Positions 48,214-64,000 of a stretch of DNA of 64,000 nucleotides are shown here, piece by piece. How positions within the stretch are numbered: the first letter of the stretch is position 1; the number at the start of each line of letters is the position of its first letter. The stretch covers positions 124,001-188,000 of the IMG/VR virus record IMGVR_UViG_3300025009_000050; one strand, 5' to 3'. The position numbers were made by a program, and so were the translations under genes. A model generated the notes under the pieces. The model had not been told where the DNA came from, ran no database searches, and worked only from the letters and a program-made list of their open reading frames with translations.

Positions 48214-48885
48214 CTAATAATTCCACGTTCTGCCCGGTCCAAAATCAATGTGAACGAATCCAGAGCCAACCTCTATCCCACCAAATCCATATGCTCTAGC
48301 AGCATTAGCTAAGTCTTCAGCTACCTTTCCACTATATGAAGCATCCACAGCTCCACCAGCTAGATGCATACTCCATGGAGCTGCATTCTTTATCGAGTCA
48401 TTATACGCTCTTGACCTAAAGCCAGAGCTTATCTTAAAAGTATTCCATCCGAGGTACGCAACAAAACTAGTTAGATATTGTGCGTATGCAGGGTGGAAAT
48501 TGTTCCACCCTGCAAAAACATTATCGCTACTCTTAAATATACTAGTGTCTAGGCTGACGTAACCAGAGAAGTTTGAGGACATACACTTCTTAATAAATGC
48601 CACTTGACTTCCTGTAACTATCTGTACCTTCCCTATACCACGTGGATTAGTAAAGCCAGATATAGTACTAGCAGCAGCCGCTTCAGAAGTAGGAAGATTA
48701 GAGTTATCACTATCTTCAGAGCTTCCACTATTCTCTTGAACATTTCCATTTACGTTTTGGATATACTTCCAGTAGTTTAATAAAGACAATGAGTACTTAG
48801 AGTCAGCAAGTTCTTGATTACGATTAAGGGTTTCTTGAGGAGTTGAGTCCCCAGTTAAATAAGCTAATATGTCTAAATAGGACAT
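48214..48885 (-). CDS. Peptidase M15A-family Zn peptidoglycan peptidase (223 aa)
   Basis: ISSGFRS...SMHLAGGAVD (SxHxxGxAxD) and GFVHIDFG in the C-terminal ~110 aa. Confidence 0.9.
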   Translation of the reverse strand: MSYLDILAYLTGDSTPQETLNRNQELADSKYSLSLLNYWKYIQNVNGNVQENSGSSEDSDNSNLPTSEAAAASTISGFTNPRGIGKVQIVTGSQVAFIKKCMSSNFSGYVSLDTSIFKSSDNVFAGWNNFHPAYAQYLTSFVAYLGWNTFKISSGFRSRAYNDSIKNAAPWSMHLAGGAVDASYSGKVAEDLANAARAYGFGGIEVGSGFVHIDFGPGRTWNY

Positions 48886-48896
48886 GCAATCTCCTC

Positions 48897-51800
48897 CTAC
48901 ATATGATCTTCAGTATTGTGAGAAAACTTGTAGTCATCTCCGGTTAGTTCATTAAACAACCGTGGTATTCCAGAACCAGCACCCTTACCTTTGCCTTCCC
49001 AGAATAAATCCATTTTGCTTGGCTTATCTCCAATTACACACCCTTGATGGCCATTAAGTCCTGCAACAAGATTCTTGCCATGCGATCTGAGTGGTACAAC
49101 AATAATGGCTTGTCTATTCCTCTTCTGTCTTTTATAGGCTTCGAATATGCTATCAGCAAGAATCGTCAATCCAACTTCAGCTATTGTAGCGATGCCAAAT
49201 GGTGACAATGCCAGCCTAGCCACCATTGCTATGGATCTTCCAGAAAAAGCTAAAGCCCTACCCGTCTTTGCTGTTTGTAAGAATGTTTTCATCTTATCAT
49301 AGCCTTCAACTACATTTCCATACTTGCCGCTATAAGCAGCACTTCTTAATGATCTATTTATTTTAACATTCTTAAAGTACTCATATACTTTAGACCAATT
49401 CTTCTCCATCTTATATATATCTGCTCCCTCAGCCATAATATCATTAAGAACCCAATTATTCCCTGTAGCTTTCACAAGCATTTCAAGTCCTAACTCACCG
49501 AAGCTACTAGTTGTTCTTCTAGCAAATGCACCAAGTGAACTACCAGTTAGTTTCCTCCAAGCTCCTATTGCTGCCCAGTGTCCAGCAATATTAGCTGTAC
49601 TACCAGCTACGATTGTAGATGCCCAGTTAACATAATTTAAGAACATCTTATCATCTACTATTACGATAGCATCTGGACATATATTAGTAACAAATCCTGT
49701 ATCGTGACTTAGATGGTGAACGACTTGCTTCACGCCACACATGCCATGCATTTCATTTACTTCATCAGCAATATAACACATATCATGCGGCTTTATGGAT
49801 GGGTCTCCAATTACAGTAAGCTCTCCCTTATACATGTCCTTAACGAAGTCACGTAGTGTTTGTGCTGCAGCTGTATTGGCAAATCTCTTAGCATTTGTAT
49901 CCCCAAAATTGAAATAAGAATGTTCAAGGAAGTCTACATTAATTACGGCTGTTTTCTGCTTTTCTGGGTATATATCCTCGTCTGCATGTACGACCATAGA
50001 TGATTTAGGCACTCCACTCTTTGTCTTATACGAGGCTATAACGTTAGTGTAGACTCCTTCTTCTGAAGCTTTAATATTATTAGCTATAATATCACACCAA
50101 CTAAAGTATGTATGTATTTGGCAGAGTGGTTTACTAATCATCTCAGTAGCTGTTCGATCATATTTCTTATTGACCGGGTCCCATTTGTAGTTCCAAGCAT
50201 ATCTATCACATATTGGCCAGTGTGGTCTACCATAGAATAGCGTACTTCTAAACTCCATCGGTACCACGGTGGCTATATAGTCAGGGAATGCTACCGCTAA
50301 TGTTTGTGCTACGTCCCATACAGTTTTACCGAATAAAGGTACTACTATATTATCCTCATCACCTTTAGGGAATGGTACTCCCCAATGAAGATACCATCCC
50401 TGGTATAAATCATTCTTTGCATCTTCAGTTAAACTATCCTGTGCTACCAACGAATAAGGGTCCCAGATCCATTGACTATGGACACCAGTACCAGTTGAAG
50501 TATATATATTAGCAGCTATCTCACCTAGTTTTTCATCCCTTTTCCATGGCAATAGCGAATCTAATTTACCTTCTGGAAATGGAAAATCACGGGGATTACC
50601 AAAGTGAGTTATGCCAAGTGGGTTTTCTGGCCTATCAAATAAATTCCATAACCATTGCTTATCAGGTTCTTTCTGGTTTATCACCTGTTCTATCCAATTC
50701 CATACCGGATTGTTGTGTCTTGCCATAAGATAACATAGAGTACTTCTAGCCTCACTGTTCATATGAGAGCCGTCATTCAGTTTGTCTGGTTCTCCACCAA
50801 TCTGGTTGCATAACTCAAGACCGTCACCTTGAGCTACTATTTCAATAATATCTCCACCAGAATCAAGTTCTGTTATAGAGCCATTAAACATTATAGGTAG
50901 AGCTTGAGCATTAGATCCATATCCCATTCTTAAATGTATCCTAGCTCCTGTTTGTAGGTATAACGCAGACACATATTCCTTCCTGGCGTCAATCAATGAT
51001 TGATGATTGAATTGACCAAAGAATAGCTCATTCCATTCATACTTCTGATCGTACTTAGGATATTCAAGATTCATATCATATCTAGTCAAGTTATCATATA
51101 CATTAGTCATCCTAATGACACAAGTATCAGCGGCTATCTTCCTAGACTTGATTATGTCTATAGATTGAATAGAGTTAAATCCGTAGAAGTTATCCCACAG
51201 TTTAATCCAACTAACCCAACGACCTTCATCTATGAGTAGCATTTGGAATGATGGGAACGCTCTGAGTAGTCTTCCTCTGTGATCAGTTTCTAGCATGTCA
51301 GTAAATGAATCTCTAACTATCTTATTGTTATCAATCTGCGGTTCATGTGGACTAAAATTAATTTTAGTTGGTGAATTAGCTGCAGACATCTTTCCTTCTG
51401 TTTGATCTTCAACTTCAGATGGATAATCTGCATGGACTCCAGTTGTAGGAGGAGTATATTTCGTACCAAGCATTTCAGATCTAGTAGAACTAGAACCAGC
51501 CGATTTAAACTTCTCATACCATTTCTTAACCTTTGTGTAATAATCCCATGAACTTGGAGCGGTCAAATCATCTACATTTCCTTTGTTGTAAGCAACTACA
51601 GCCCAACCATATATATCTTCAGAATACTTAGGATTCTTTAATTTAGTTACTGCTATTATCTTTTCTATATAATATTTAGTACATACGTGAATATTATATT
51701 TCCAATCCCATGCTATTCTTCTAGCAGTTTCCAAGGTTAAACCATGTTGATCTAGCATATATTGTCCAAGTCCTACAGCAGATGAACCCTCTTCGTTCCA

Positions 51801-54800
51801 ATATGGCTTTTTATTTATAAATTGTAACCAAGATCTACTTTCTTGTGTTATGATAGCTTTCATCCATAATACAGCTGGCTCTTTAAGCATATCAGTACCT
51901 GTTAGCAAATGATCTACTTCTGATTCAATTGCTCTAGCAACAGCTTCCTCGTCTGGATTAACACCAATATGACTAGCAAAGTACTCTCCTTCTTCCTCGT
52001 GTCCTTTAAACCATCTATTTATTTCATTTTCAGTTGGTGAATAATTTATCATTGATTTATTACTTACATTCGGTTCGCTAACAGCCCTGTATTGCATAAT
52101 ATCAACATTAATCGCACTTTCACTTGAATCCCCATTTATCTTAACTGGAGGCTTTTCATCGGCATCAATATTAGATATATCATTCTTATATTGCTCTTGC
52201 TTTGCCTTCCCATATTTCTTATTAAGCTCTAGGTCTTCTTTAATCTTAGCCTCTGAGTACTTCTTTAGTTCATCACTCACTTTATATAATGGTTGATATG
52301 TTTCATTCTCATTAAGAGTAAGACTTGTAGGTACTCTGAGAGATGCTGTTCCTATCCTACATTTTATATCCATACCAGCTTTCTTCTCATCCTTCTCCTG
52401 TTCTTCCTTGTTTATCATATCACGCAAGTCTTTTCTGAGTGTATGCGGAGTATATATGAAGAAATCAGGATCAACAAACTTACCTGCTGACCAACCAGCC
52501 TCCTGAGGAAAGATATAGTTTATATTCGCTTTAGTAGTAAAGGTCTTAAGCTCGTCCCATGTAGGAAGTTCTAAGTCTGGATATACTTCAATATTTTTAA
52601 GTCTTTCTTCAACTATAACTTCTTCCATGCCGTAGAAAGATTTTACATTATTGAGATTGACTCCTTCTCCAGTGTTTAATGACTTCAGTCTTTCAGACCT
52701 ACGCTGAGTTTTATCAAAGCCAATCAGAGTAAGCACTATTTCATATCTATCTGGGAAACCACGTACGGTATTCACTGTTACATTTTCTACTAGTGTATAT
52801 CGAACTCCGAATAAATTTACTATTGGGTTATTAATCCCAAGATATCCACACACCATACCGAACTTGTAATCCCTAGTATATCTCTCAGCATCCCTGATCA
52901 TTTTAACAAGGTTCTTAACTGGCTCCTTACCTACCGAAGTCATGCTTATTTGTATGTAGGCATCCTGAGAGCCTAAATATTGATGAGTAGAGGCTTCACA
53001 TTGTTGTATCTGCATTGAACTAATTATATTTTCTAGACCAACATGGATGGATTCCACAACGAGACCCTTTATTCGTAACTCATCCATTAAAATGTTTTCT
53101 TCTGCGTTCTCAATCCTTTGTTGTCGTTGTTTCAAGTCATCTAATTTCTCAGCAAAATCATCTTGCTGAGTTTCATATCTATCTGCAATTGTATCTAATA
53201 GATGTTTGTCTTCTACATCAATCACATACCAACCATTTGATGGTTCGCCATAACCGTTAGCCTTCAGTAACTCAATATTTTGGTATGCGGTAATATTTAC
53301 ACGATACCTGCGTTTAGTATAATACATGGGATCACGTTTTACATATACTCCTGGAGCTTGGAATCTAATATCTTCCATCTTAGAATCTTGTATTCCAGTC
53401 AATTCATCTACTGAGACATCTTTGATTACTCCACTTGGCCAAGTCTCAGCTATCTTCTCGTATGCTTCTTGTTGCATAAATGCTTCTTCGCATCCTTCTC
53501 CATCACTATTAATCTTACTCCAAAGAGTATTAGAATCTGGGTATGTCATATCAAGCTTGCTCTTAGACTTTAGTAGCTCAGCTACCTCTTGTTTAATCTG
53601 CATCAAGTTAGATTCATTAGCTAATCTAAAAACTAAATCAGTACTACTGCCGTCTAATGGCTTAAGGTATATTCTATCTGCAGATCGCTCATTCATTGGC
53701 CCTTGGCAATACCACCTGAATAGTGGCCAACAGAAGGAGTCATAGAAGTCGTCCGTATAAGGCATATATGCTTGATGGTCAAACTTTAACATAGTTATAT
53801 TAACAACTATACAATCAGGGAATCCTGGTACAGTTTGAGCAGTCATATTGACTAATGTTACAGATTCTACCCCATGTACTTCTTCAAGGTAATCATTTTG
53901 GATAGGAACGAATGGGCTCTTCTTGAATTGAGATACTAGAGGTCTTAAGCCATTTACGTAGAATGTTGAACCATCGTTACCCTTAACTGGATAACCATTA
54001 ATATAGTCTTTATTATGGAAGAACAGTTCAACTTGTACTGCTATATCAGAGAACCCTGTCTTAGTTTGGATACTGCTCTTACTGCGTAATACAGGTACTT
54101 TATTGATCTTAGACTGTCTTGTTACTGTTATAGCCTGTGGAGGTATAGCTAATTCTACATCTCCTATTAGCATATAGCCAGGAGGTCTATTATCGCGCGG
54201 CATACGCTCATTCTCCATAGGTTCAACGAGATTTAGATTAGAGTTATAACCGACTTGTGGTCTATAATTTATGCTTGTTACGGTGGGATCTACTACTTCA
54301 GGTTTCCTCTTTTTATGAGTAGTCCATGATGATACGGAGACATGCCCGCTATTCATATTCATTACATCGCCAAGATTACTCTCGATCAAGCTTCTATTCA
54401 CATTCACAGAATTATACTCATCTGTGTATACTACGGCAAGTCTACGATTATAAATGTCTGTAGCAAATACTATTTCACCATCAGTCTTACTTAATACAGA
54501 TAAATCTAAGACTACAATACTACCCTCTTCTAGTATGCTTTTTGTAAACTCTTTAGCTTTTTCACCAATAGCACGTGCCTCATCTAAACTAAGGCCCTCA
54601 GTTATTGAGTAAGCGCTGGAATGAGTCTCTTGATACTGGTTACCAGATGTTTCAGGACAATTCACTCCTATGAAGCGCACATTAAAAGATGTATCTTCTG
54701 GTTCTAAGCCACATGCTTCGATAGTATCTCCGTCAATAACCCTAATTACCGAAGCTCTCATTATGTGATTCTGTAGCGTATCTATTGTAGGTTTATCCTC

Positions 54801-54815: not shown

Positions 54816-55099
54816 TATCTTCCCTCCCAATTAGCTAACTCTATATACATAATCGATTCATCAATATATTCAACATAAACATCGGCCCTAAATAGTTTCT
54901 TAGGAGTATTGTCTATAGGTTTGAATGGACCTAGCGTACTCATTAAGTTGTATAATTTAGGACCGATAGTATTGCTATCTGCTGGTTGTGGATTAGAATA
55001 TGTGTGAACATATTTCCCATCTACCCTTGCAGCTATATCCCACCTATCATAATCAGAATAGGATACACCTATTAACTTTCCACTAGATCTTATGATCAT
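54815..55099 (-). CDS. Small hypothetical protein (94 aa)
   Basis: GGAGG SD at 55108-55112; its TAA overlaps the ATG of the hub gene. Confidence 0.75.
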   Translation of the reverse strand: MIIRSSGKLIGVSYSDYDRWDIAARVDGKYVHTYSNPQPADSNTIGPKLYNLMSTLGPFKPIDNTPKKLFRADVYVEYIDESIMYIELANWEGR

Positions 55100-55111
55100 T
55101 CACGTATCCTC

Positions 55112-58100
55112 CTAGAATGCTTGGCCCTTGGTCAAGGCATTAGTTACAACGCTTTGCACCCACATATTATCTATCCTCTGAGTGTTATCATTAGACGTAA
55201 TATTCATATTCATATTAACTGGCATTGCAGATGATATCTGTCCTTGTACTAATTGTCCGATCTGCTCATTAGACAAGCCATTAGCATCCCTAGCTCTAAT
55301 CATAACCTGTAGGTTTTCGTAACCTTCTCCACTCTGTGTTATCCTAGCTACTGGTCCTCCAGGAGAAGCATCAGGAGTAGGTATATAACCACCGCCATCT
55401 ATGGGTGGAGCTTGGTCCGGCTGAGGCATCATGTCTTTAGGTAGAGGGTCTGCAAACATATTACCTACCATCATTAGTCCTGCAAATGCTCCAGCTCCCC
55501 ATCCTGCACCAGCTAATTTAGAGCCACCAGCGACATGTTCAACATCCCTGAATATATTTCGCATTGTTTGTTCGCCAACAGTAACCATGTCCGGCCTAGT
55601 TCTCTGGTCAGCATAGGCACTATTTAGAACCATATTAGATGAAGCCCTCTCATCTAATGCCCACTTGGTTCGTTGTTCAGCACGTTCAAATGCCTTTCTC
55701 TCTAGTTCCTCAGCCTTCTGCTCACCGTGCAATATCCTCCATACGTTTGTTACTGAGGAGGTTGGTGCTTCTCCAGAAAGGTTTCCATTTAACACATCGA
55801 CCAGGGTGTTAAGATTTTTAATCCCTGAACTTACGCCCATTCTATTTGTTGCGCTGTGTATTACCCCTTCTAGATCTCCACCCATAACAGTCTTTAGATC
55901 ATTGACAGCGCCAAACCCTTCATACACAGTAGCGATCTGACGAACTGCAAATTTAGAACTACCCTTTATTCCTCCACTATAGGCTTGTCTGCGGTACTCT
56001 TCCATGTCTGTAGCGTCTACATCCATAGCTCCTACTATCTTCGCATGTTCAATGAAGGTTTCTCTATCTCCACGAATCATTGCATTGACCATTTCGGATG
56101 AAGAACTTATTCTCTTATCAAGTAGCTTATTCCTCTCTGCTTCTTGTCCTGCAGAATCTATTCCAGCCCATTCATCAATTGTTTTTGCTAGATGATCATC
56201 AAGTGCAGATTTCGAGAAGTGTTTAGACGAGATAGAAGACTGTGTTACCAATTCACCGAGGGCTGTTACAGCTTGTGCTTTCTTCAAGTCAAACGACTGA
56301 GGATTTATTCTCATAGCAATCTCTGCCATCTTACGCATTGAAGTAGCTACGTTCGAAGAGTAACCAATATATGAGCGGCCAAGTCTTGCTTCTAATTCGG
56401 CTCTTGCGACGCTTCCTACGGTTTGTAGCTCTGCCTTTGGTAGATCTATATTTTCACCCGTATAAGCCTTCACCCAATCTCCGTATGATGCACTGCTACT
56501 CTTTCTATTGTCTGCTTCATATAGCTTAGATACTAATTCATCATAGAACTGTCTTCTAGGTTCTATCTCTCTTATATGCGCTGCTATTTCACCTATTGCA
56601 CCTGTGCCAGACCGTAGTTGAGATTCAATCTGCCATCTGGTTTTGCCTTTGAAGTGTGCAAGCAGAGTGGACATAAAATCACCATCGTTGTCTGCTGCAT
56701 AAGCTACGGCATCACCAACAGTTACTTGAATTGCATGAGGAGCTAGCCTATCTAATGCCTCGTTAACTCTGAGCCAGGTAGGTTCTATAGACCTTAAGCC
56801 TTCTGTAGGATAACGACCTACTATACCAGGCAGACCTTTAACTCCATACTTCTCCTGAAGTTCTCTAGTGTCTCCGAGTGCTAATTCTTCTAATAGCTCA
56901 GGAACACCTTTCTTCATACCCTTAGTCATTTCTCTTAATCTACCAAGGGATATTTCAGCAGTAGCTGCTGCTTTCTTTTGTCCAGGAGAGAATGTTTGAA
57001 CTAAGAATTGTCCGCTATGTTGGAGTCTAGCAGATTCTATACTGTTATAAACAAGACCTTTAGAATCGCTGACACCTCTGATGTTTACGTTGGTGAAATG
57101 ATCCATTGCCTTTTGTAGGCTTGTGCTTGCTTCTTTCCCTGTTAGGTCAAGCGTAGCTATGTCTTGGAGCGTTCTAATCACTCTACCACTTGCTGCTAAT
57201 AATTCATTAGCCTGTGGCATTTGAGCAACCCCTAGTTTCCTAGGCTGTCCTATAGGTAGAAAGACTTTATTGATTATATTATCACCAGCAGTTACATAGA
57301 ACGGTAACTCAAATACCGCTCCACCACGGGACAATATTTTCTCTGCCTTCTTTGGAGTAAGAGCTCCAGGTTCTCCAGAATGTACTTGGTTATTAGCTAT
57401 CTTCTCTATGTCGTCATACCACGTACCGGTATAGTCGATATCACTCTTGACATCTCCAGAACGTAGGAATCTTTTAAATGATGATAATGATACTCTGCCT
57501 TCTCCAGTTTCTCCTATAGGAGTCTGAGAATGTATTACTGTGTCTCTACTGTCTATCATTCCAGTTAGACTATTAATTGACCTTTCATACTTTCTTAACT
57601 GTGACTTTACTTCCTTCTTCCCAGCTTCTATGCGTCCATTTTCGCTAAGCTTGTCTGCAACTGCGCCATCTAATAGATCTACTCCAGCTTGTTCTCTAAC
57701 CATCTTCTCGTATTCTTTAGCTGTTGCAGTTAACCCATTAAGTCGAAACATGCCTATTTCCTTGGGTCCTATCTTGTATATACCACCCTCACTACCTACT
57801 GCTTTGAACCATGGTTCAATAGGTTGTGCTCCTACATTCTCATAACCAGTCATTATATTACCAACACCAGCAACATTAATTAATAACTTGTCCGTTAAGT
57901 TGCTTCCTATAATGTCACTTACTTTATCAAGCACTTGCGTCTTGAATAGCTTGTGATCTATTACTTGGTTCTTAGGATTATTGATCATCACAAGCATTTT
58001 ATTCTTGCTTCCTGGTACGTCTTCAAACTTGAACCCGCTATTGCCGAAGAAGTTATTGAGAACTTTGATTACATCATCTTCTACTTTGTTTCTTACTAGA

Positions 58101-61100
58101 TTCTTTGTAGTAATCTGATTCTGTACTTCATTAACCATAGCCCTTACTTGGCTACTTATGATGTCTCCATGTCCGCCGTGCTTGAGTGCTTGCGAGCCCA
58201 TTACAAGATGAAGCTTATCGGCCTCTGCTCCGAACAAACTGTTCCATCTATCGTTCTCAACCAGAGTCAAAGTCATCTTATCACCGCTAGAGGTTATAAG
58301 TTTAAGACCATTTGCTGCTGGTAGTGTTCTTTCTACTGAAACTTTATATTTGTTTTCTCCAAGTTTCGTTATAGCATTTACTACACCAGGCTGTTTCTTA
58401 TTATACCTTGCATCTCCCTGAAGTACGCCGAAAGTATTACCTTCGCCATCTACTATCTTAGACTCTACCAATTGACCAATGGTGAATGGCTTTTCAGAGG
58501 GAGCGATAGTATAAGGGTCGCCCTTCTCTATCGAAGCTAGTATCTCCTTATTAATGTCACTAACTACATACTCGTTAACCATCTTCATCTTGAGAAGATC
58601 ATTAGCTATATCGCCACGCATAAATGCTCTGGCGTCATACGTCGATTCTACTAATCCGGTTAAAGGAGCTCCAGTCCTCTCAGCCTCAGCAATCATCTTC
58701 TGTACTTGGTTATCATCCATGTAAGCTGTCTTAACAGTAACCCATGGTGCTAAGTTATTACCTGTGACTCCATATCTAGCTTTCCCTGCTTCAGTCATGA
58801 GTAGGGGGTTAGCTAGTTCACTATACTTCGTTCTAAGTGCTTCTGCTGATTTAGGGTGGAATGGATGGATATTCTCTGCCTGTGTCATCCTCATTGTTGC
58901 TGCAGATGAATGGTATCCAAATGGAATGAACTGACGTATGTCATTGACACTACGACTGATTCTTCCATTCTTACCAGTAAACTGAGCTTCCTTGAGTGTG
59001 TGAGGATTTAATACGTCATTTATAACATCGATAGGAGTACCAAGTTTTACACTTAATCTCTCTGCAATGGTTCTATTCAGGTTTACAGAGTCAGTTAAGT
59101 TCAAACCTGAGATGTCCTTCCCAGCTAGGAATTCTTTTATTCCTTCAAAGTAGATTACTTCACTACGCTGTCTTATACTAGCATGACTTAGGTTGCGTAT
59201 CTTCCTAGTATCCATTACTTCATCGGAGTCAAGGAAATTGGCACCAGATAAGTCTTTAAGTACTTTGTTCTGAGCCCAGTTGACAAGTGCCTGTGCTTGT
59301 GCATAGTCTCCTTTCAACATTGCTTCTTTAACTCGTTTAGATATACCAACCTGAGATTGTAGAATCTTATCGAAGCTTGTTTCAACACCAATGTTCTTAC
59401 CATCAAGTGTGAAGTCCATCTGGTTAATTCTCATAACCCTACCAACAGTAAGAATCCTTCTTTCATCCACCAATGGGATGTTAACCTTAACTACATCGCT
59501 ATTATTCATTATCTGTTCTACTGTCTGCTTACCTACTGTTGCTGCTTTCTTCTCATCATATAGAGCAAAGATAAAACCCTTATTGTCAGGTGATGACAAT
59601 ATAGTCCCATCTATATTTGCATCTGTAAGATACCTTGATAGTAGCTTCTTTATTGGTTCTTCTGCTTTCCTATTAAGCCCGAATAAAGGCCCTAGTCTTT
59701 TTAGTGGAGAAAGCTGTTCATGAATAATAGCATTATGCGCTTCTAACATCTTAGCAAACTCTTGGTTTGCCGCTAGGTTAGGAACAAAAGCTTTATCTAT
59801 CTTCTGCCATGCACTACTACCACGTCTTTGTCCTTCATCTAGCGCATGATTAGCTACCAACCGCATTTGATCAGGGGTAAGCTTTTCCCATATGCCTCCA
59901 TTATTGGCATCAACATGGGCAACCTTATATGACAAGAACTCATTAGCTAAGTTCTTAGCTTGTATGTCGTCTATCTTCATACCAGAAACAATATCATTAG
60001 CTATCCTAGTCCTATCAAAAAGCTTTGCTGCTATTTGCTTAAGTACAAAGTTACTTTCTCTCGGACCTTGCTTCTGGATCTCTGATAGTCTTAGAAAGTT
60101 AGTAACTTCAGTACGATCTAATATATGCTTACCACCTAACTTATTTATTAGCACTGGTAGTTCGATTTTGTCGATGGGTCTTTTGGTGATTTGCCTTAGC
60201 TGTGACACTATACCTTTATAACTACCAAGATTAAGAACTATATTATCTGATAGTTGTAACATTCTATTGTTAGTTGTAGTCTTAATAACTTTCTTAGCTG
60301 GACTAATCCCACCAGTAGCTTTACGTAAGTCAGGTATTTGGACCCTACCTTCCATTATGTCTTGTAGGGCAGTAAGGGCAAAGTCCTTCTGTACTCCTTT
60401 AAGACTTTGGAATGTTCCGCTACTAATGACAGCATTAATCATTCCTCTCTCAGCTCTTAGCCTATCTTGCATATAGTAGAAGTTTCTAGCTTGTTGCTCA
60501 GAATTGAATAGATCTTTAAATTGTCCCTTAGTTAAATCATCCATAGAAGCTCTATTGACTCCAGCTTTATCAATTGCATCAAGAGCTCTCATGTATCTCT
60601 CCGCTCTTACATGGCCTCCATCGGTATCAAAGATTCTATAATATGCACGTAGAGCTCTGTCCTTCATTCTCTCTGTCCTAGTTTCTTCACCACTGACACC
60701 AGTAATATGTTCAGCATTATATGGTACTAAATGAGAGAATATACTACGTATACTATCGAACCCAGTACCACTAATATTCTCAGGTCTAACAAAGGTATGG
60801 TATAATCCTTCATCTACATTACGTAGGGTTAATGCCCATCCACCATGTTCAAAACCTTCAAGAGCGCCCTTCTCTATCTGCTTAAAGCTATGAATTCTGT
60901 ACTCGGTATTCTTATATAGGTTCCCACTAGATATAGGCTTATCGGGGTTGTCTGAGTAAGCATCTATGAATTTGCCTGTATCATCAAGTTTATATATCCC
61001 ATCGTACTTATTCTTTTCATAAGGACTTAATCCGGAAATTGAGAATAGACTACTATCAGACTTTATTGTCTTGTTGTCTATAGCAAGTACTCCACCACTT

Positions 61101-62470
61101 ATAGCATTCCAGTCTAATGATATGCTAGCCCCAGCTGCTATTCTTCTAGCACTAGCTATCTTACTATTAATATTACCTCCAATGGAGTTGAGTAACATAG
61201 GTACTGCTTCAGCATCTCCACCAGCAAAGTGTTCAATTCTATTATTGAAGGCATTAGACAATACCTCTAATGTAGTTAGACCTTGTTTCCCTCTTATCCC
61301 ACCACTTAATGTCTTGTAGTGTTCCCTCATTTTCTTGTCACCAATTAGCGGTGCTATCTGTCCGATAGGGTCATGATATGCAAGGTCAATAAGTCTATTA
61401 ACATCCAACGCTCTATGAGTACTATTAATGATATGTAGGTTCTTCATTAGGGTTTCAATGCTACTACTAATAGGACTCTGTGGTCCAAGAGCAGTCCTAG
61501 TCTGATTAAAGTATTCCATCATGGCAGGGATATCGTGTTCTAAGAAGTTATACCCCATGAGGTTACCGCCATTCTTAGCTATGTTCTCTACATGATGATT
61601 TATAGCTTTAATCATGCCATCAAGATAGCTACCTGAGTTTCCATTGCCATATAAATTTTTTAAGCCATTTCTCATCTGTGAAGTGTATGCTTTCAAATTA
61701 GTAAATGTAGATCTGTCTGGTAACTCAGATGGTGACTTAAGCTTATCTTTATTGACAAGTCTTACATCTCCTATGCCTGGGATTGTCTCTGTCTTAAATA
61801 CCTCAGAATCTTGATACCTCATTAACCACCACAGTGTACGTCTATGATCATCTGTTAATCCAGCCATTCCTGTGCTCTCTACTTGTTTGATTAAATTTTT
61901 TAGTTCTACCTTCTGCTTTTCATCTACGAAGCCAGCTAATGTCATAGTATTCATTTTATCTAGCATTGGAGAGCCACTCTTGAGGCCATTGAACTGCCAA
62001 CTAGACAAACCTACCTCAGTCATAGCAAATAGATTCATGCTCTGATTCTTTGCAAGTGGACTGACACCGAGGTTTTCAATATCTAAGCTTAAGTGAGTCA
62101 TGCCTACATTTTTAACCATGTTCTCCCATGCGGTTATTGTTCTTTGCGCTCTAGTAGCTCCCCTGGTATTTATGTAATTAAACACACTAGTGCTTGGGTT
62201 ACTAAGTACCCCATTTATTTCAGCGTTTAGTGCCCTACTAACTTTAGATCTCTCTACTACGCCACCAATGTTTCTAGGTGCACCAATGAAGTCTGGGATA
62301 TTCTTAGAACGTATTATCTGTTCTTTAGTCGGTTCTGAATTAGGGTCGTAGTAATTCCTACCTGAACCACCAAAGTTCATAAGAACTTTTGGAGTACCTA
62401 TACTATTAATAATACCTTTCTGTTCCAATACACTAGGTATACTAAAGAGTTCGCTATCATTAAACTTCAT
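55112..62470 (-). CDS. Single-chain two-barrel (double-psi beta-barrel) DNA-dependent RNA polymerase with N-terminal DEDDh 3'-5' exonuclease; probable virion RNAP (2452 aa)
   Basis: RpoB-like, in order: IPFGYHSSA..MRMTQA, VKTAYMD...TYDARAFM, GLKLITSSGDK. RpoC-like, in order: RLQHSGQF, IVGRYPT, AIQVTVGDAVAYAADNDGDFM, ALGELVTQSSISSKH. Exonuclease: LDIE, GYNFLEHD, HFAGGD. Confidence 0.88.
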   Translation of the reverse strand: MKFNDSELFSIPSVLEQKGIINSIGTPKVLMNFGGSGRNYYDPNSEPTKEQIIRSKNIPDFIGAPRNIGGVVERSKVSRALNAEINGVLSNPSTSVFNYINTRGATRAQRTITAWENMVKNVGMTHLSLDIENLGVSPLAKNQSMNLFAMTEVGLSSWQFNGLKSGSPMLDKMNTMTLAGFVDEKQKVELKNLIKQVESTGMAGLTDDHRRTLWWLMRYQDSEVFKTETIPGIGDVRLVNKDKLKSPSELPDRSTFTNLKAYTSQMRNGLKNLYGNGNSGSYLDGMIKAINHHVENIAKNGGNLMGYNFLEHDIPAMMEYFNQTRTALGPQSPISSSIETLMKNLHIINSTHRALDVNRLIDLAYHDPIGQIAPLIGDKKMREHYKTLSGGIRGKQGLTTLEVLSNAFNNRIEHFAGGDAEAVPMLLNSIGGNINSKIASARRIAAGASISLDWNAISGGVLAIDNKTIKSDSSLFSISGLSPYEKNKYDGIYKLDDTGKFIDAYSDNPDKPISSGNLYKNTEYRIHSFKQIEKGALEGFEHGGWALTLRNVDEGLYHTFVRPENISGTGFDSIRSIFSHLVPYNAEHITGVSGEETRTERMKDRALRAYYRIFDTDGGHVRAERYMRALDAIDKAGVNRASMDDLTKGQFKDLFNSEQQARNFYYMQDRLRAERGMINAVISSGTFQSLKGVQKDFALTALQDIMEGRVQIPDLRKATGGISPAKKVIKTTTNNRMLQLSDNIVLNLGSYKGIVSQLRQITKRPIDKIELPVLINKLGGKHILDRTEVTNFLRLSEIQKQGPRESNFVLKQIAAKLFDRTRIANDIVSGMKIDDIQAKNLANEFLSYKVAHVDANNGGIWEKLTPDQMRLVANHALDEGQRRGSSAWQKIDKAFVPNLAANQEFAKMLEAHNAIIHEQLSPLKRLGPLFGLNRKAEEPIKKLLSRYLTDANIDGTILSSPDNKGFIFALYDEKKAATVGKQTVEQIMNNSDVVKVNIPLVDERRILTVGRVMRINQMDFTLDGKNIGVETSFDKILQSQVGISKRVKEAMLKGDYAQAQALVNWAQNKVLKDLSGANFLDSDEVMDTRKIRNLSHASIRQRSEVIYFEGIKEFLAGKDISGLNLTDSVNLNRTIAERLSVKLGTPIDVINDVLNPHTLKEAQFTGKNGRISRSVNDIRQFIPFGYHSSAATMRMTQAENIHPFHPKSAEALRTKYSELANPLLMTEAGKARYGVTGNNLAPWVTVKTAYMDDNQVQKMIAEAERTGAPLTGLVESTYDARAFMRGDIANDLLKMKMVNEYVVSDINKEILASIEKGDPYTIAPSEKPFTIGQLVESKIVDGEGNTFGVLQGDARYNKKQPGVVNAITKLGENKYKVSVERTLPAANGLKLITSSGDKMTLTLVENDRWNSLFGAEADKLHLVMGSQALKHGGHGDIISSQVRAMVNEVQNQITTKNLVRNKVEDDVIKVLNNFFGNSGFKFEDVPGSKNKMLVMINNPKNQVIDHKLFKTQVLDKVSDIIGSNLTDKLLINVAGVGNIMTGYENVGAQPIEPWFKAVGSEGGIYKIGPKEIGMFRLNGLTATAKEYEKMVREQAGVDLLDGAVADKLSENGRIEAGKKEVKSQLRKYERSINSLTGMIDSRDTVIHSQTPIGETGEGRVSLSSFKRFLRSGDVKSDIDYTGTWYDDIEKIANNQVHSGEPGALTPKKAEKILSRGGAVFELPFYVTAGDNIINKVFLPIGQPRKLGVAQMPQANELLAASGRVIRTLQDIATLDLTGKEASTSLQKAMDHFTNVNIRGVSDSKGLVYNSIESARLQHSGQFLVQTFSPGQKKAAATAEISLGRLREMTKGMKKGVPELLEELALGDTRELQEKYGVKGLPGIVGRYPTEGLRSIEPTWLRVNEALDRLAPHAIQVTVGDAVAYAADNDGDFMSTLLAHFKGKTRWQIESQLRSGTGAIGEIAAHIREIEPRRQFYDELVSKLYEADNRKSSSASYGDWVKAYTGENIDLPKAELQTVGSVARAELEARLGRSYIGYSSNVATSMRKMAEIAMRINPQSFDLKKAQAVTALGELVTQSSISSKHFSKSALDDHLAKTIDEWAGIDSAGQEAERNKLLDKRISSSSEMVNAMIRGDRETFIEHAKIVGAMDVDATDMEEYRRQAYSGGIKGSSKFAVRQIATVYEGFGAVNDLKTVMGGDLEGVIHSATNRMGVSSGIKNLNTLVDVLNGNLSGEAPTSSVTNVWRILHGEQKAEELERKAFERAEQRTKWALDERASSNMVLNSAYADQRTRPDMVTVGEQTMRNIFRDVEHVAGGSKLAGAGWGAGAFAGLMMVGNMFADPLPKDMMPQPDQAPPIDGGGYIPTPDASPGGPVARITQSGEGYENLQVMIRARDANGLSNEQIGQLVQGQISSAMPVNMNMNITSNDNTQRIDNMWVQSVVTNALTKGQAF

Positions 62471-62482
62471 TGGTGTCCCACC

Positions 62483-64000
62483 TTAAACATTGATTATATT
62501 TCCAGGATCTCTATTCATAACATTGATTATCTCATTGGTTCTATCCTTGTCTATTGATACATTAACATTCATTGAATGGGCTTCCGCAGCTGGACCATGA
62601 GATATTTGCACATCTATATCAGACAGTCCCGCTCCACGTAGTACTTGACTTAGCCTAGTTTGTATACTTCCTATGTAACTACTAGGCTTGAAGGGATCTA
62701 CATCAGGAGCAGCTTCAGCATATGCCTCATCATCGGGCCAGTATCCGAATTCAGACATATCTAGTGCTTCGTTCTTTATTACCTTGAGTTTAATGTCCTC
62801 CAAACTTACGTTAGCTTTCCAGCCTTCCCAGTTAGCAGTTGGGAGATAATGACCACGGAAGTAATCAGTGATACCGACCTTCTCATTTTGTTCCATTCCC
62901 CATCTTGCCTGGTATAGTCTACGTTGGTTCTTAGGAACTAGACTGAGAATTTCCTTCCTCTCACTTTGGTCTGCGCTCATGAAGTACTGATAAAATTCTC
63001 TATCCTTCTTAGGTAAGGCACGATATATGTTTACCATATCTCCAAGTGGATCAACGCCATATAATGTTGACTTCGCTTGTAGATTGTAGTATAGAGCTTG
63101 GATTGCATCAGGACCTAGTTGAGTGAGTCTTCTATCCTCGTCTATAGCAGTTAGCTCTCTATTGATATCTTTAAGCTTAGACTTGTTCAGGTCTGTATCA
63201 AGTTGTCCATCAACATCTTGTAACTTAAGCCATCTCTTAAGTGACTTAAGGGTGTTTCTCCTAGCCTTATTAATTCTTCCGCGCTTAGTCTCATCAGCAA
63301 TTATATCCTCTACATCTACGCCTTCTGTAGCTATAGCTTGCTTTCTAGCTTTCTCGTAGAGTCCCTTATATTTAACGTACTTGAGCATATCGAAGTATTC
63401 GTTGATCTCACGTTCTTTACGACGACGCTTGGGTATCCATACTTCACCTGATGAGTCTGTAGTCTCCCCAAGTACACGAGCTGTTGATAAGCCACCAGCA
63501 GTTACAGCACCGGTAAATGTGCCAAGCTTTCTACCGAGTACATTAGAGCCGAATAGCCTACCTAGTACTGCACCATATAAAGCAGCAATTGGTGGTGACT
63601 TGGCAGCGAATGCCTCTAGTGTTGGCTTCATAATTCCGCTCCAGGGATCGTACCATGGTTGCCATGCTTTACCGTGTACTTCCGTACGCTTATACATTTC
63701 AAGCGGAGATCTCACTTGTAAGAACTTTGTATGGAAAGCTGTATCAAGGTGAGCAAACCATTCCCACCACTTACCTACTGTTATCTCCTCAGGATAGAAT
63801 CTAGCGTTAACTCCAACAGCGCTGAAATCAGTCTCCTTCTCAGTAACCTGATCTCCAACTGTTCTGAGTAATTTAGCTTGTAGTGGACCACCTTCTGGAG
63901 TATATACTACGGCATGCATGGTGCTCAGTACGTCCTTCCGGACTCTATTAAGCGGGTCCTTGTCTATACCTATCTGTACTTTAGCTCCAGGGTATATTAT
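62483..64000 (-). CDS. C-terminal part of a large tape-measure-like / ejection protein; partial, open to the right edge
   Basis: The frame stays open from 63919 to 64000 (IIYPGAKVQIGIDKDPLNRVRKDVLST precedes the track's MHAVVY). Helical, charged composition with an Ala/Gly hydrophobic stretch (IAALYGAVLGRLFGS...GTFTGAVTAGGL). Confidence 0.6.
   Translation of the reverse strand: MIYPGAKVQIGIDKDPLNRVRKDVLSTMHAVVYTPEGGPLQAKLLRTVGDQVTEKETDFSAVGVNARFYPEEITVGKWWEWFAHLDTAFHTKFLQVRSPLEMYKRTEVHGKAWQPWYDPWSGIMKPTLEAFAAKSPPIAALYGAVLGRLFGSNVLGRKLGTFTGAVTAGGLSTARVLGETTDSSGEVWIPKRRRKEREINEYFDMLKYVKYKGLYEKARKQAIATEGVDVEDIIADETKRGRINKARRNTLKSLKRWLKLQDVDGQLDTDLNKSKLKDINRELTAIDEDRRLTQLGPDAIQALYYNLQAKSTLYGVDPLGDMVNIYRALPKKDREFYQYFMSADQSERKEILSLVPKNQRRLYQARWGMEQNEKVGITDYFRGHYLPTANWEGWKANVSLEDIKLKVIKNEALDMSEFGYWPDDEAYAEAAPDVDPFKPSSYIGSIQTRLSQVLRGAGLSDIDVQISHGPAAEAHSMNVNVSIDKDRTNEIINVMNRDPGNIINV

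What the first reader, a model, noticed from the sequence alone, without database searches (positions are those of the whole stretch)
48214..64000. Possible co-ejected enzyme package: tape-measure-like protein, exonuclease-RNAP, nuclease-SLT-hub and M15 peptidase
Seen: consecutive coupled genes encode two peptidoglycan-cutting activities (SLT glycan cleavage and M15 peptide cleavage), two or three nuclease domains and an RNAP. Each giant protein has Gly/Ala-rich hydrophobic segments near its C-terminus: RNAP GAGWGAGAFAGLMMVGNMF (~55455-55520); hub WASTIVAGSTANIAGHWAAIGAW (~49550-49630) and MVARLALSPFGIATIAEVGLTIL (~49150-49230); upstream protein IAALYGAVLGRLFG. Inference: together they may form a wall-penetrating, membrane-spanning ejection conduit that delivers a membrane-tethered transcription machine.
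Basis: inference. Interest (0 to 1): 0.68.

Follow-up and report, generated by a model that had tools for sequence, protein, structure and literature searches.

The report
Tail-gene giant protein carrying an RNA polymerase
In a 244-kb jumbo phage related to Bacillus phage 0305phi8-36, the giant gene just upstream of the baseplate hub encodes one 2,452-residue chain holding a 3'-5' exonuclease, a complete fused beta/beta'-type RNA polymerase and a conserved membrane-anchor-like tail, so the phage probably injects its own transcription enzyme through its contractile tail.

Summary
The observation largely holds. Five tightly packed minus-strand genes lie in the tail/baseplate operon of a jumbo myovirus related to Bacillus phages 0305phi8-36, KLEB27-3 and WH1.

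The 2,452-aa protein (55112-62470) gave no Pfam, PHROG or PDB sequence hit. Profiles and two AlphaFold models show these parts:
- a DEDDh exonuclease (about residues 60-450);
- a full RNAP beta-like module (about 910-1600; VIA Z 15-17 to beta/Rpb2 chains only);
- a beta'-like module (about 1600-2260; AADNDGD motif; Foldseek and VIA hits all RNAP);
- a Gly/Ala-rich hydrophobic helix, present in all 56 relatives;
- a conserved C-terminal domain.

The hub carries a staphylococcal-type nuclease, a probable but unproven SLT domain, and two conserved hydrophobic segments. The 223-aa gene is an M15 peptidase. A third nuclease, in the upstream protein, is not supported.

No other RNAP was found in the genome. 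Homologues are annotated as virion proteins.

A tail-tape-fused virion RNAP is already known from Thermus phage P23-45. This one differs in four ways: it sits in a contractile-tail jumbo phage, it is of the cellular/phiKZ beta-beta' type, it is fused to an exonuclease, and the metallopeptidase is a separate gene. Ejection and membrane tethering remain inference.

The parts
62483..64000 (-). C-terminal 505 residues of a 1,991-aa protein (P0008; the gene continues beyond the window to genome 192458). It is the candidate tape measure / ejection protein. It has an N-terminal hydrophobic helix and two Gly-rich hydrophobic segments (residues 1620-1665), followed by a conserved WIPxRRRKEREI motif.
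   Evidence: Homologues include 0305phi8-36 gp145 and WH1 gp096 (virion structural proteins) and KLEB27-3 gp031+gp033. Length is steady at 1,930-2,024 aa across relatives. No Pfam or PHROG hit.
55112..62470 (-). P0001, 2,452 aa: one chain holding exonuclease, beta-like and beta'-like RNAP modules, a hydrophobic helix and a C-terminal domain.
   Evidence: The family comprises 56 full-length (>2,000 aa) relatives at 50% clustering, 2,110-2,759 aa long. Members are unnamed or called 'structural protein' in databases.
61121..62293 (-). DEDDh (DnaQ-like) 3'-5' exonuclease domain, P0001 residues about 60-450. Conserved acidic and histidine residues: D130, E132, D313, H414, D419.
   Evidence: invariant or nearly invariant columns; profile against PDB, E 6e-8 to TREX-like, PolC, PolB and ExoI exonucleases.
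57671..59743 (-). RNAP beta (second-largest subunit)-like module, P0001 residues about 910-1600. It includes the beta double-psi barrel motif G1388-x-K1390-x5-G1396-x-K1398 (window 58277-58309).
   Evidence: AlphaFold model pLDDT 81. Foldseek top 50 are all beta/Rpb2 chains, best E 9e-11, TM 0.40. VIA wide search: the nine best are all beta-type chains at Z 15.1-17.2, and the next unrelated chain is at Z 7.1. Profile hit to Pol IV/V subunit 2 at the GxK motif, E 0.007.
55691..57670 (-). RNAP beta' (largest subunit)-like module, P0001 residues about 1600-2260. It carries GRYPT (1885-1889) and the metal-binding motif A-A-D1927-N-D1929-G-D1931 (window 56678-56692).
   Evidence: AlphaFold model pLDDT 81.5, pTM 0.80. 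Foldseek: at least 393 hits at E<=1e-3, top 50 all beta' chains. VIA: Z 10-12 to Rpb1/beta' over 250-466 residues. Unbiased search: all 16 chains with Z>=8 are two-barrel RNAPs. Profile against PDB: best hit phiKZ nvRNAP gp55, E 1.3e-5. D, D, D and P1888 are invariant in the family.
55451..55516 (-). Gly/Ala-rich uncharged hydrophobic helix, P0001 residues 2319-2340 (LAGAGWGAGAFAGLMMVGNMFA): a candidate membrane anchor.
   Evidence: Present in 56 of 56 relatives. Median uncharged run is 22 residues. Net flank charge is higher on the N-side in 46 relatives and on the C-side in 6.
55115..55363 (-). Conserved C-terminal domain of P0001 (residues 2370-2452). It is shared with slot proteins that lack the RNAP: 0305phi8-36 gp146 and a 752-aa exonuclease-only protein.
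   Evidence: PMC2147016 notes that the last 60 residues are conserved in gp146 relatives.
54815..55099 (-). 94-aa ORF of unknown function between the RNAP gene and the hub. Its stop overlaps the likely ATG of the hub.
   Evidence: It is absent at this position in KLEB27-3 and L008.
48897..54830 (-). Baseplate hub, 1,977 aa as read; the likely true start is the ATG at 54815. Parts: SNase domain (residues 24-156 = 54363-54761); SLT-like stretch (residues about 985-1090 = 51561-51878); two conserved hydrophobic segments (49557-49625 and 49137-49235).
   Evidence: Homologous to 0305phi8-36 gp147 'baseplate hub' and KLEB27-3 gp035. PHROG 20474, E 2e-216. SNase. SLT lead. Hydrophobic segments conserved in hubs of 6 other phages, KD up to 2.3.
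48214..48885 (-). 223-aa protein with a C-terminal M15 (VanY/MepK-like) zinc peptidase domain (residues 132-221 = 48223-48492). The H-x6-D and H ligands are visible in SMHLAGGAVD and VHID.
   Evidence: Pfam PF08291, E 1.7e-9, and PF05951. NCBIfam MepK, E 8.6e-10. PHROG 894 endolysin.

Best explanation
What it is. The region is the tail-lumen and baseplate-hub part of the structural operon of a contractile-tailed jumbo phage. Its centrepiece is a virion-borne RNA polymerase. One chain holds, in order:
- a DEDDh 3'-5' exonuclease;
- a complete beta-like module;
- a complete beta'-like module of the cellular/phiKZ type;
- a single conserved hydrophobic helix;
- a small C-terminal domain shared with RNAP-less proteins that occupy the same slot in related phages.

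Most likely mechanism. The steps below are inferred unless marked.
1. The protein is made late and built into the tail next to the hub through its C-terminal module. Gene position and virion annotation of homologues are shown. Its location inside the particle is inferred.
2. On sheath contraction, the hub-borne SLT-like domain and the M15 peptidase open the thick Gram-positive wall.
3. The hydrophobic segments of the hub, the upstream 2-kaa protein and P0001 insert into the membrane.
4. The N-terminal 2,300 residues of P0001 reach the cytoplasm, refold and transcribe the first genes of the entering DNA, possibly while anchored at the entry pore.
5. The exonuclease, the older and more widespread cargo of this slot, acts on nucleic acid ends. 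Whether it attacks host nucleic acid, processes phage DNA ends or trims RNA 3' ends is unknown.
For: Domain identity:
- Exonuclease: profile E 6e-8, and the DEDDh residues are invariant.
- Beta module: Foldseek E 9e-11; VIA Z 15-17 exclusively to beta/Rpb2 chains, including AR9 and phiKZ nvRNAP; GxKx5GxK motif.
- Beta' module: profile E 1.3e-5 to phiKZ gp55; at least 393 Foldseek hits; VIA Z 10-12; every chain with Z>=8 in an unbiased search is a two-barrel RNAP; NRxPT...DxDGD is invariant.

Purifying selection: catalytic residues are kept across 56 relatives that share only about 17-30% identity.

Tail context: the operon order is sheath, tubes, chaperone-like genes, about 2,000-aa protein, this gene, hub, baseplate J. 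That order is conserved in KLEB27-3, 0305phi8-36, a 241-kb contig and a 126-kb contig.

Virion association of homologues: 0305phi8-36 gp145, gp146 and gp147 are annotated as found by mass spectrometry. KLEB27-3 gp034 is 'structural protein'. WH1 gp094-096 are 'virion structural protein'.

Need for packaging: the gene sits in the late structural operon, and no other RNAP was detected in the 244-kb genome by PF00623, PF05183, PF00940, the family profile or 0305phi8-36 gp99.

Either/or pattern: 0305phi8-36 has a separate YonO-like gp99 and no slot RNAP. KLEB27-3 and this phage have the slot RNAP and no gp99.

Anchor: the hydrophobic helix is conserved in 56 of 56 relatives, with an N-side positive charge bias in 46 against 6.

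Precedent: P23-45 gp96 is a tape-measure-fused virion RNAP with transmembrane and metallopeptidase domains, shown to transcribe pre-early genes (PMC10770324).
Against: - There are no proteomic, structural or transcription data for this phage. Virion presence is borrowed from annotations of homologues, and the one with stated mass-spectrometry support (0305phi8-36 gp146) lacks the RNAP part.
- The hydrophobic helix is Gly/Ala-rich and only moderately hydrophobic. In this phage the KD 19-residue mean is 1.15, below the classical 1.6 threshold. It could be an oligomerisation or tube-lumen contact element.
- A folded 1,350-residue polymerase cannot fit in a tail-tube lumen, so storage in an extended form and later refolding must be assumed.
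- No repeated phage-specific promoter motif was found by simple k-mer counting. Sigma-70-like sites in the presumptive early region are not enriched (84 found against 74 +/- 8 in shuffles). The enzyme's templates are therefore unknown.
- RNAP absence elsewhere in the genome rests on profile searches that can miss divergent enzymes. Pfam also missed this one.
Confidence: 0.6

Rival explanations
1. P0001 is first of all the tail tape measure (length ruler), as annotated for its positional counterpart 0305phi8-36 gp146. The enzyme domains are passengers. This does not exclude delivery of an RNAP; it is the P23-45 situation.
For: It occupies the same slot as the gene called 'hypothetical tape measure protein' in 0305phi8-36 (PMC2147016). 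Family length is narrow, with most members at 2,200-2,500 aa. It has a C-terminal hydrophobic segment, as many tape measures do.
Against: Nearly the whole chain is taken up by globular enzyme folds, leaving no long helical tape. In a related 180-kb phage contig the same slot holds only a 752-aa exonuclease-plus-anchor protein. The gene upstream keeps about 1,930-2,024 aa in all relatives and has the Gly-rich hydrophobic pair typical of tape measures.
Confidence: 0.2
2. P0001 is a virion RNAP stored in the capsid, like N4 vRNAP or the phiKZ inner-body RNAP, and not in the tail. It is ejected with the DNA, and its gene merely lies in the tail operon.
For: The known virion RNAPs of N4 and phiKZ are head-packaged (own knowledge; the review PMC7598289 was listed but not read). 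A folded polymerase does not fit in a tube lumen.
Against: The gene is conserved between the tail chaperone-like genes and the hub in every relative examined. The C-terminal module is shared by all slot proteins whatever their cargo.
Confidence: 0.12
3. The hydrophobic segments are not membrane-spanning. They are buried or oligomerisation helices that hold the proteins in the tail-tip complex, and the RNAP, if ejected, is soluble in the cytoplasm.
For: Hydropathy in this phage is low (1.15 for P0001) and the segment has a Gly/Ala-rich, GxxxG-like composition. No transmembrane predictor was available.
Against: Position and length (median uncharged run 22 residues) are conserved in 56 of 56 relatives. 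Several relatives reach KD 1.6-1.95. The flank-charge bias follows the positive-inside rule. Hub segments reach KD 2.2-2.3 in relatives.
Confidence: 0.3
4. P0001 is a non-virion enzyme, for example a late-gene RNAP or a primase-like RNA synthase for replication, co-expressed with structural genes and not packaged.
For: No direct virion evidence exists for this phage. Two-barrel enzymes can also act as RNA-dependent polymerases (QDE-1 and RDR2 are among the structural matches).
Against: Homologues are annotated as structural proteins. The shared C-terminal module with the mass-spectrometry-detected gp146 points the same way. An enzyme made only with late structural genes could not start the phage's own transcription unless it is carried over in the particle.
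Confidence: 0.08

Closest known systems
Thermus phage P23-45 gp96, tail-tape-measure-fused virion RNAP (Chaban et al. 2024, PMC10770324)
   Same: It is a giant tail-operon protein of the virion containing a two-barrel RNAP with a DxDGD motif plus a membrane segment. It has the same proposed role: transcription of the first genes at the DNA entry pore. A peptidoglycan metallopeptidase belongs to the package.
   Different: - P23-45 is a siphovirus with an 84-kb-class genome and a 5,002-aa true tape measure (genome size from own knowledge).
- Its RNAP is N-terminal, 'flat', and groups with YonO/crAss-type single-subunit enzymes.
- Here the phage is a contractile-tailed jumbo phage, and the RNAP lies in the C-terminal two-thirds of the chain.
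- The beta-like module matches cellular/phiKZ beta at Z 15-17, but gp96 only at Z about 6 over the barrel.
- An N-terminal DEDDh exonuclease is present here.
- The metallopeptidase is a separate gene here.
- No second (non-virion) RNAP was found here.
phiKZ / AR9 (PBS1-like) jumbo-phage multisubunit RNAPs
   Same: They are the best sequence-profile hit (phiKZ gp55, E 1.3e-5) and among the best structural matches for both modules: AR9 and phiKZ nvRNAP at Z 16.7-17.1 for beta and 9.4 for beta'. They are jumbo-phage enzymes of the beta/beta' type, some of them virion-packaged.
   Different: Those enzymes are split into four or five separate polypeptides and are head-packaged (own knowledge). They are not encoded in the tail operon. 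Here beta and beta' are fused in one chain of about 1,350 residues with an exonuclease and an anchor.
crAss-like phage phi14:2 gp66 and N4 vRNAP (virion RNAPs embedded in giant proteins)
   Same: The polymerase is part of a giant (>2,000 aa) virion protein delivered to the cell to start transcription.
   Different: gp66 matches only weakly (Z 5.7-5.9) and belongs to the YonO/RdRP-like clade. N4 vRNAP is T7-like and not two-barrel (own knowledge). Both are podoviruses.
0305phi8-36 gp146 ('hypothetical tape measure protein') and gp99 (YonO-like RNAP)
   Same: gp146 is the positional counterpart. It shares the exonuclease motifs, the hydrophobic segment and the C-terminal domain, and it was detected in virions.
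   Different: gp146 has a long coiled-coil-like N-terminal half and no RNAP module. That phage instead encodes a separate, non-structural YonO-like RNAP, gp99, which this genome lacks.

Membership tests
Two-barrel (double-psi beta-barrel) RNA polymerases, beta/beta' (multisubunit-derived) type | beta'-type barrel with NRxPT...NADFDGD-like metal-binding loop | tested here: met
   GRYPT at 1885-1889 and AADNDGD at 1925-1931. P1888, D1927, D1929 and D1931 are invariant in 54 aligned relatives. They align to NRAPTLH...NADFDGD of bacterial beta' and phiKZ gp55.
Two-barrel (double-psi beta-barrel) RNA polymerases, beta/beta' (multisubunit-derived) type | beta-type barrel supplying two basic residues (GDKxxxRHGNKG-like) | tested here: met
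   G1388-x-K1390-x5-G1396-x-K1398 is conserved as GxKx5Gx[KR]xT. It aligns to GDKFSSMHGQKG of Pol IV/V subunit 2, E 0.007.
Two-barrel (double-psi beta-barrel) RNA polymerases, beta/beta' (multisubunit-derived) type | Overall fold of the second-largest and largest subunits beyond the barrels | tested here: met
   Beta: 300-509 residues aligned along chains, for example to residues 29-1304 of bacterial beta; Z 15.1-17.2, next unrelated chain Z 7.1; Foldseek TM 0.40. Beta': 250-466 residues aligned along Rpb1/beta', Z 10-12.
Two-barrel (double-psi beta-barrel) RNA polymerases, beta/beta' (multisubunit-derived) type | Template-dependent RNA synthesis | not testable with these tools
   Needs an in vitro assay.
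Tape-measure-fused virion RNAP (P23-45 gp96 kind) | The RNAP is part of the protein that sets tail length | tested here: inconclusive
   It is the positional counterpart of the gene annotated as tape measure in 0305phi8-36. However, the slot protein ranges from 752 to 2,759 aa, and the upstream roughly 2,000-aa gene is the steadier ruler candidate.
Tape-measure-fused virion RNAP (P23-45 gp96 kind) | Specific homology of the polymerase to gp96/gp64 | tested here: not met
   gp96 scores only Z 5.8-7.2, restricted to the barrels. Cellular-type subunits score 10-17. It was not among the 60 best profile hits shown.
Tape-measure-fused virion RNAP (P23-45 gp96 kind) | Membrane segment and metallopeptidase domain in the same chain | tested here: inconclusive
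   A hydrophobic helix is present and conserved. There is no peptidase domain in P0001. An M15 peptidase is encoded two genes downstream.
Tape-measure-fused virion RNAP (P23-45 gp96 kind) | Presence in virions and transcription of pre-early genes | not testable with these tools
   Only annotations of homologues are available.
DEDDh (DnaQ-like) 3'-5' exonucleases | Exo I DxE, Exo II NxxxD, Exo III HxxxxD motifs and profile similarity | tested here: met
   D130, E132, N308, D313, H414 and D419 are invariant or at least 90% conserved. Profile E is 6e-8 to 1e-3 to TREX-like, PolC, PolB and ExoI exonuclease domains.
Lytic transglycosylase SLT (GH23), in the hub | Catalytic E-S, GLxQ and AYNxG motifs, and a match to the family model | tested here: inconclusive
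   Motifs lie at 996-997, 1020-1023 and 1080-1084 in the right order. 25 of 30 nearest named Atlas clusters carry PF01464. There was no Pfam, NCBIfam or PDB sequence hit, and the catalytic Glu is absent in KLEB27-3.
Peptidase M15 (VanY/MepK-like) | Match above Pfam gathering score; H-x6-D...H zinc ligands | tested here: met
   PF08291 scores 38.2 bits against a cut-off of 23.2. SMHLAGGAVD and VHID are visible in the sequence.
Staphylococcal nuclease (SNase) fold, in the hub N-terminus | Match above Pfam gathering score | tested here: met
   PF00565 scores 26.7-30.9 bits against a cut-off of 21. NCBIfam EcnA E 1.6e-12, below that model's equivalog cut-off. By my reading of the sequence, the Asp-40-equivalent Ca ligand reads Asn (RFIGVNCPE), so activity is uncertain.
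T4 gp27-like baseplate hub | Homology to an established hub, and position before the baseplate wedge genes | tested here: met
   tblastn E 3e-56 to 0305phi8-36 gp147 and 6e-145 to KLEB27-3 gp035. The gp27 domain of gp147 was shown in PMC2147016. Baseplate J-like genes follow.

The most novel reading that the evidence does not exclude
A lineage of Bacillota jumbo myoviruses has, independently of P23-45, attached a complete single-chain beta-beta' RNA polymerase of the phiKZ/cellular type, together with a DEDDh exonuclease, to a modular C-terminal 'tail-slot anchor'. The same slot carries different nucleic-acid enzymes in different phages: exonuclease alone, exonuclease plus coiled coil, or exonuclease plus RNAP. 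The contractile tail therefore acts as a delivery device for exchangeable enzyme cargo. In this phage it delivers the only RNAP the genome encodes, which would make at least the onset of infection independent of host RNAP.
Probability: 0.35. Interest if true: 0.85.

Novelty: new variant of a known kind. Interest (0 to 1): 0.72.

Why it matters
It would be the second known case, and apparently an independent one, of a virion RNA polymerase built into a tail-lumen protein. It would be the first in contractile-tailed jumbo phages of Gram-positive hosts.

The enzyme is one of the most compact complete beta+beta' polymerases: about 1,350 residues in one chain. That makes it attractive for structural and mechanistic work on minimal two-barrel RNAPs.

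The family has at least 56 full-length sequence clusters at 50% identity and 11 IMG/VR loci on contigs up to 264 kb. It is currently labelled 'hypothetical' or 'structural protein' and is invisible to Pfam and PHROGs, so this transcription strategy is overlooked in surveys.

The exchangeable cargo in one conserved tail slot gives a direct handle on how large folded enzymes are stored in and ejected from phage tails. The fused exonuclease raises a new question about what a 3'-5' exonuclease does at the moment of DNA entry.

Tried and rejected
Searches that came back blank or weak:
- Single-sequence searches of P0001 were blank in Pfam, PHROGs, PDB phmmer and the word-indexed protein search. Only the exhaustive HMMER search gave relatives.
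- The search for related loci with the single protein found nothing in IMG/VR.
- The broad alignment A1 was too divergent for pattern scans.
- A closer sub-alignment found 11 IMG/VR loci and none in 185,579 species genomes. The latter is a weak negative, as only two peptide patterns were used.

Ideas tested and not supported:
- An SNase-like third nuclease in the upstream protein.
- The upstream protein as a recognisable tape measure family. No Pfam, PHROG or Atlas hit.
- A second RNAP in the genome, by PF05183, PF00623, PF00940, the family profile and 0305phi8-36 gp99. None was found. The PF00940 control rang nowhere, so that one search is uninformative.

Promoter hunt:
- k-mer counts over 112 upstream regions gave only Shine-Dalgarno words such as TAAGGAGGTG.
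- The sigma-70-type scan showed no enrichment.
- One 63-nt element with four copies at genome 227.1-229.1 kb was seen but not followed up.

Literature: one search, on phage names, was unproductive.

I did not try another route, and read laying was not used.
- Complex prediction was not used. Which parts of the hub and P0001 touch is unknown, and no binding claim rests on it.

Full report
CONTEXT
The window is bases 124001-188000 of a 244,052-bp virus record judged complete. All genes of the finding lie on the minus strand in one tightly packed operon, with gaps of 11-12 nt or overlaps.

Protein searches against phage records place the phage with Bacillus jumbo myoviruses 0305phi8-36, vB_BauM_KLEB27-3, vB_BceM_WH1 and Edson, and with Moorella phage MTATph1. 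The long Shine-Dalgarno words (TAAGGAGGTG) upstream of genes fit a Bacillota host.

The gene order, read in the direction of transcription, is:
- sheath;
- two or three tube paralogues;
- chaperone-like genes;
- a 1,991-aa protein (P0008, which runs out of the window);
- the 2,452-aa protein (P0001);
- a 94-aa ORF;
- the 1,977-aa hub (P0002);
- the 223-aa M15 peptidase (P0003);
- baseplate wedge genes.
It is the same in KLEB27-3, 0305phi8-36, a 241-kb contig and a 126-kb contig.

THE 2,452-AA PROTEIN
Single-sequence scans were blank (Pfam, PHROGs, PDB). An exhaustive HMMER search found 88 relatives at E<=1e-3. Of these, 55 are longer than 2,000 aa (2,110-2,759 aa); with P0001 they make the 56-member family analysed here. 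None has a functional name in any source.

In their alignment two sets of catalytic residues stand out, although overall identity is only about 17-30%:
- D130, E132, N308, D313, H414 and D419;
- K1390, R1886, P1888, D1927, D1929, G1930 and D1931.

A profile of residues 60-720 matches DnaQ-like 3'-5' exonucleases in the PDB: TREX-like, PolC, family-B polymerase exonuclease domains and ExoI, with E from 6e-8. The N-terminal domain is therefore a DEDDh exonuclease with a complete active site.

A profile of residues 1330-2300 matches only the largest subunits of RNA polymerases. The best hit is phiKZ non-virion RNAP gp55 at E 1.3e-5, followed by bacterial beta' and eukaryotic and archaeal Rpb1. 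The alignment covers the SGR, NRxPT and NADFDGD motifs.

An AlphaFold model of this part (pLDDT 81.5, pTM 0.80) gave:
- at least 393 Foldseek matches at E<=1e-3, the top 50 all beta' chains;
- VIA Z 10-12 over 250-466 aligned residues along Rpb1/beta';
- in a search of 48,161 representative chains that does not depend on Foldseek, all 16 chains with Z>=8 being two-barrel RNAPs. The single-chain enzymes RDR2 and QDE-1 aligned across both barrels.

A second model, of residues 700-1620 (pLDDT 81), matched the second-largest subunit:
- Foldseek top 50 all beta/Rpb2, best E 9e-11, TM 0.40;
- in the unbiased search, the nine best chains all beta-type subunits at Z 15.1-17.2, with 300-509 residues aligned along almost the whole beta chain. 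These were plastid, bacterial, Pol I and III, vaccinia, ASFV, Pol IV, and the AR9 and phiKZ phage enzymes. The next, unrelated chain scored 7.1.

The beta barrel motif GxKx5GxK is conserved and aligns to GDKFSSMHGQKG of Pol IV/V subunit 2.

P0001 thus contains a complete beta module (about 910-1600) fused to a complete beta' module (about 1600-2260). It is closer to the cellular/phiKZ type than to the YonO, crAss or P23-45 type, which match only at the barrels with Z 5.7-7.2.

THE C-TERMINAL MODULE
Residues 2319-2340 form an uncharged Gly/Ala-rich hydrophobic stretch:
- Every one of the 56 relatives has such a stretch, with a median of 22 uncharged residues, about 109 residues from the C-terminus.
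- It is the hydropathy maximum of the whole protein in 52 of 56.
- Net charge of the 15-residue flanks is higher on the N-side in 46 relatives and on the C-side in 6. For a membrane helix, this predicts that the enzyme part faces the cytoplasm.
- Hydropathy is moderate: 1.15 here, and up to 1.95 in relatives.

The last 80 residues are a conserved domain also found in slot proteins without an RNAP:
- 0305phi8-36 gp146 has a coiled-coil-like N-terminal half, exonuclease motifs and the anchor, but no RNAP.
- On a 180-kb contig, a 752-aa protein with only a DNA_pol_A_exo1 exonuclease and the anchor sits in the same slot, before a 2,370-aa hub with SLT and M23 domains.

The slot therefore carries exchangeable cargo on a common anchor, and the exonuclease is the commonest cargo.

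NEIGHBOURS
Hub. It is homologous to 0305phi8-36 gp147, whose T4 gp27-like domain was shown by Hardies et al. (PMC2147016).
- It starts with an SNase domain. Pfam is above cut-off. NCBIfam EcnA gives E 1.6e-12, below that model's curated cut-off.
- The SLT call is probable but unproven. The E-S, GLGQ and AYNKG motifs are in the right order, and 25 of 30 nearest named Atlas clusters are SLT. No family model or PDB sequence matched.
- Two C-terminal hydrophobic segments are conserved in the hubs of six other phages, with hydropathy up to 2.3, and are followed by a conserved PL..GK...AG.NGH motif.

P0003. It is an M15 peptidase with intact zinc ligands. It could be a tail-associated lysin, or less likely the endolysin.

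P0008. It has an N-terminal hydrophobic helix and a conserved pair of Gly-rich hydrophobic segments. Its length is steady at 1,930-2,024 aa, and it is split by inserted genes in KLEB27-3 and in the 180-kb contig. This makes it at least as good a tape-measure candidate as P0001. The supposed SNase-like fold in P0008 is not supported.

IS THE POLYMERASE DELIVERED?
Evidence shown here:
- The gene lies in the late structural operon next to the hub.
- Homologues are annotated as virion proteins.
- The genome shows no other RNAP by five different queries.
- Among four related genomes, the slot RNAP and a separate YonO-like RNAP (0305phi8-36 gp99) are mutually exclusive. MTATph1 has neither.

Inferred:
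- storage in or at the tail;
- ejection ahead of the DNA;
- refolding in the cell;
- anchoring at the pore;
- transcription of the first genes.

The precedent is strong. P23-45 gp96 is a tape-measure-fused virion RNAP with membrane and metallopeptidase domains that transcribes pre-early genes. Their supplementary files, as far as they are held as text, do not mention KLEB27-3, its protein accession or 0305phi8-36. No paper in the searchable library describes this family as a polymerase.

VERDICT
- The thing itself is a new variant of a known kind: a tail-slot virion RNAP of the beta-beta' type fused to an exonuclease, in jumbo myoviruses of Gram-positive hosts. It most likely arose independently of the P23-45 fusion.
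- Domain identity: about 0.95. Virion association: about 0.8. Ejection and early transcription: about 0.6. Membrane tethering: about 0.4.

LIMITS
- Both fold jobs went on P0001, so the hub SLT stretch, the P0001 C-terminal domain and P0008 were not modelled.
- No transmembrane predictor was available; hydropathy and charge counts are my own scripts.
No reads were laid.

Noticed in passing
L011:10001-12259 (JGI contig of 180,252 bp) and L002:11582-19195 (0305phi8-36 ORF146): The slot immediately upstream of the hub holds different cargo on the same C-terminal anchor. One case is a 752-aa protein with only a 3'-5' exonuclease. Another is a 2,537-aa coiled-coil plus exonuclease protein. The third is the exonuclease-RNAP fusion.
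   Followed up: partly
Genome-level: own genome, OM634661.1, EF583821.1, OR602862.1: The slot RNAP and a separate YonO-like RNAP (0305phi8-36 gp99) are mutually exclusive in the four genomes checked. MTATph1 shows neither.
   Followed up: partly
L001:8725-9360 (KLEB27-3 gp032); L009:8660-9997; L003:14335-15822: Mobile genes repeatedly hit this operon. One gene splits the P0008 homologue in KLEB27-3. An HNH endonuclease gene sits between the P0008-like gene and the RNAP gene in a 126-kb contig. A transposase lies in the slot region of MTATph1.
   Followed up: no
Outside the window: genome 227,079-229,088 (+ strand), = L012:10079-12088: There are four copies of a 63-nt element with core TAACTAGTAAGTGT, followed by a TATAAT-like hexamer and GGTATGTGT. 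They cluster in the presumptive early region and may be promoters or operators.
   Followed up: partly
window 54815-54830: The hub ORF as listed starts at a TTG. Gene callers start it at the ATG six codons in (window 54815), which overlaps the stop of the 94-aa ORF. This suggests translational coupling.
   Followed up: no
window 3-43149, minus strand: A run of very large ORFs lies downstream of the baseplate genes: 576+, 1,211, 1,019, 685, 539, 975, 1,315, 4,122, 1,243, 1,459, 427 and 701 aa. The 4,122-aa protein (19034-31402) has a lactonase-type beta-propeller and a weak pentapeptide-repeat hit. The 1,315-aa protein has a phage tail fibre repeat. These are probably fibres, like the 'curly fibres' of 0305phi8-36.
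   Followed up: partly
P0001 residues 450-910 (window 59741-61120): The stretch between the exonuclease and the beta-like module has conserved residues (D604, R608, F614, R670, E674) but no assigned fold. Only a small helical domain in it resembled clamp-loader C-terminal domains, at Z about 7, which is not meaningful.
   Followed up: no
Genome intergenic regions outside the window: tRNA T-arm-like words (GGTTCGATTCC, three copies) in intergenic DNA suggest that the phage carries tRNA genes. None lies in the window.
   Followed up: no
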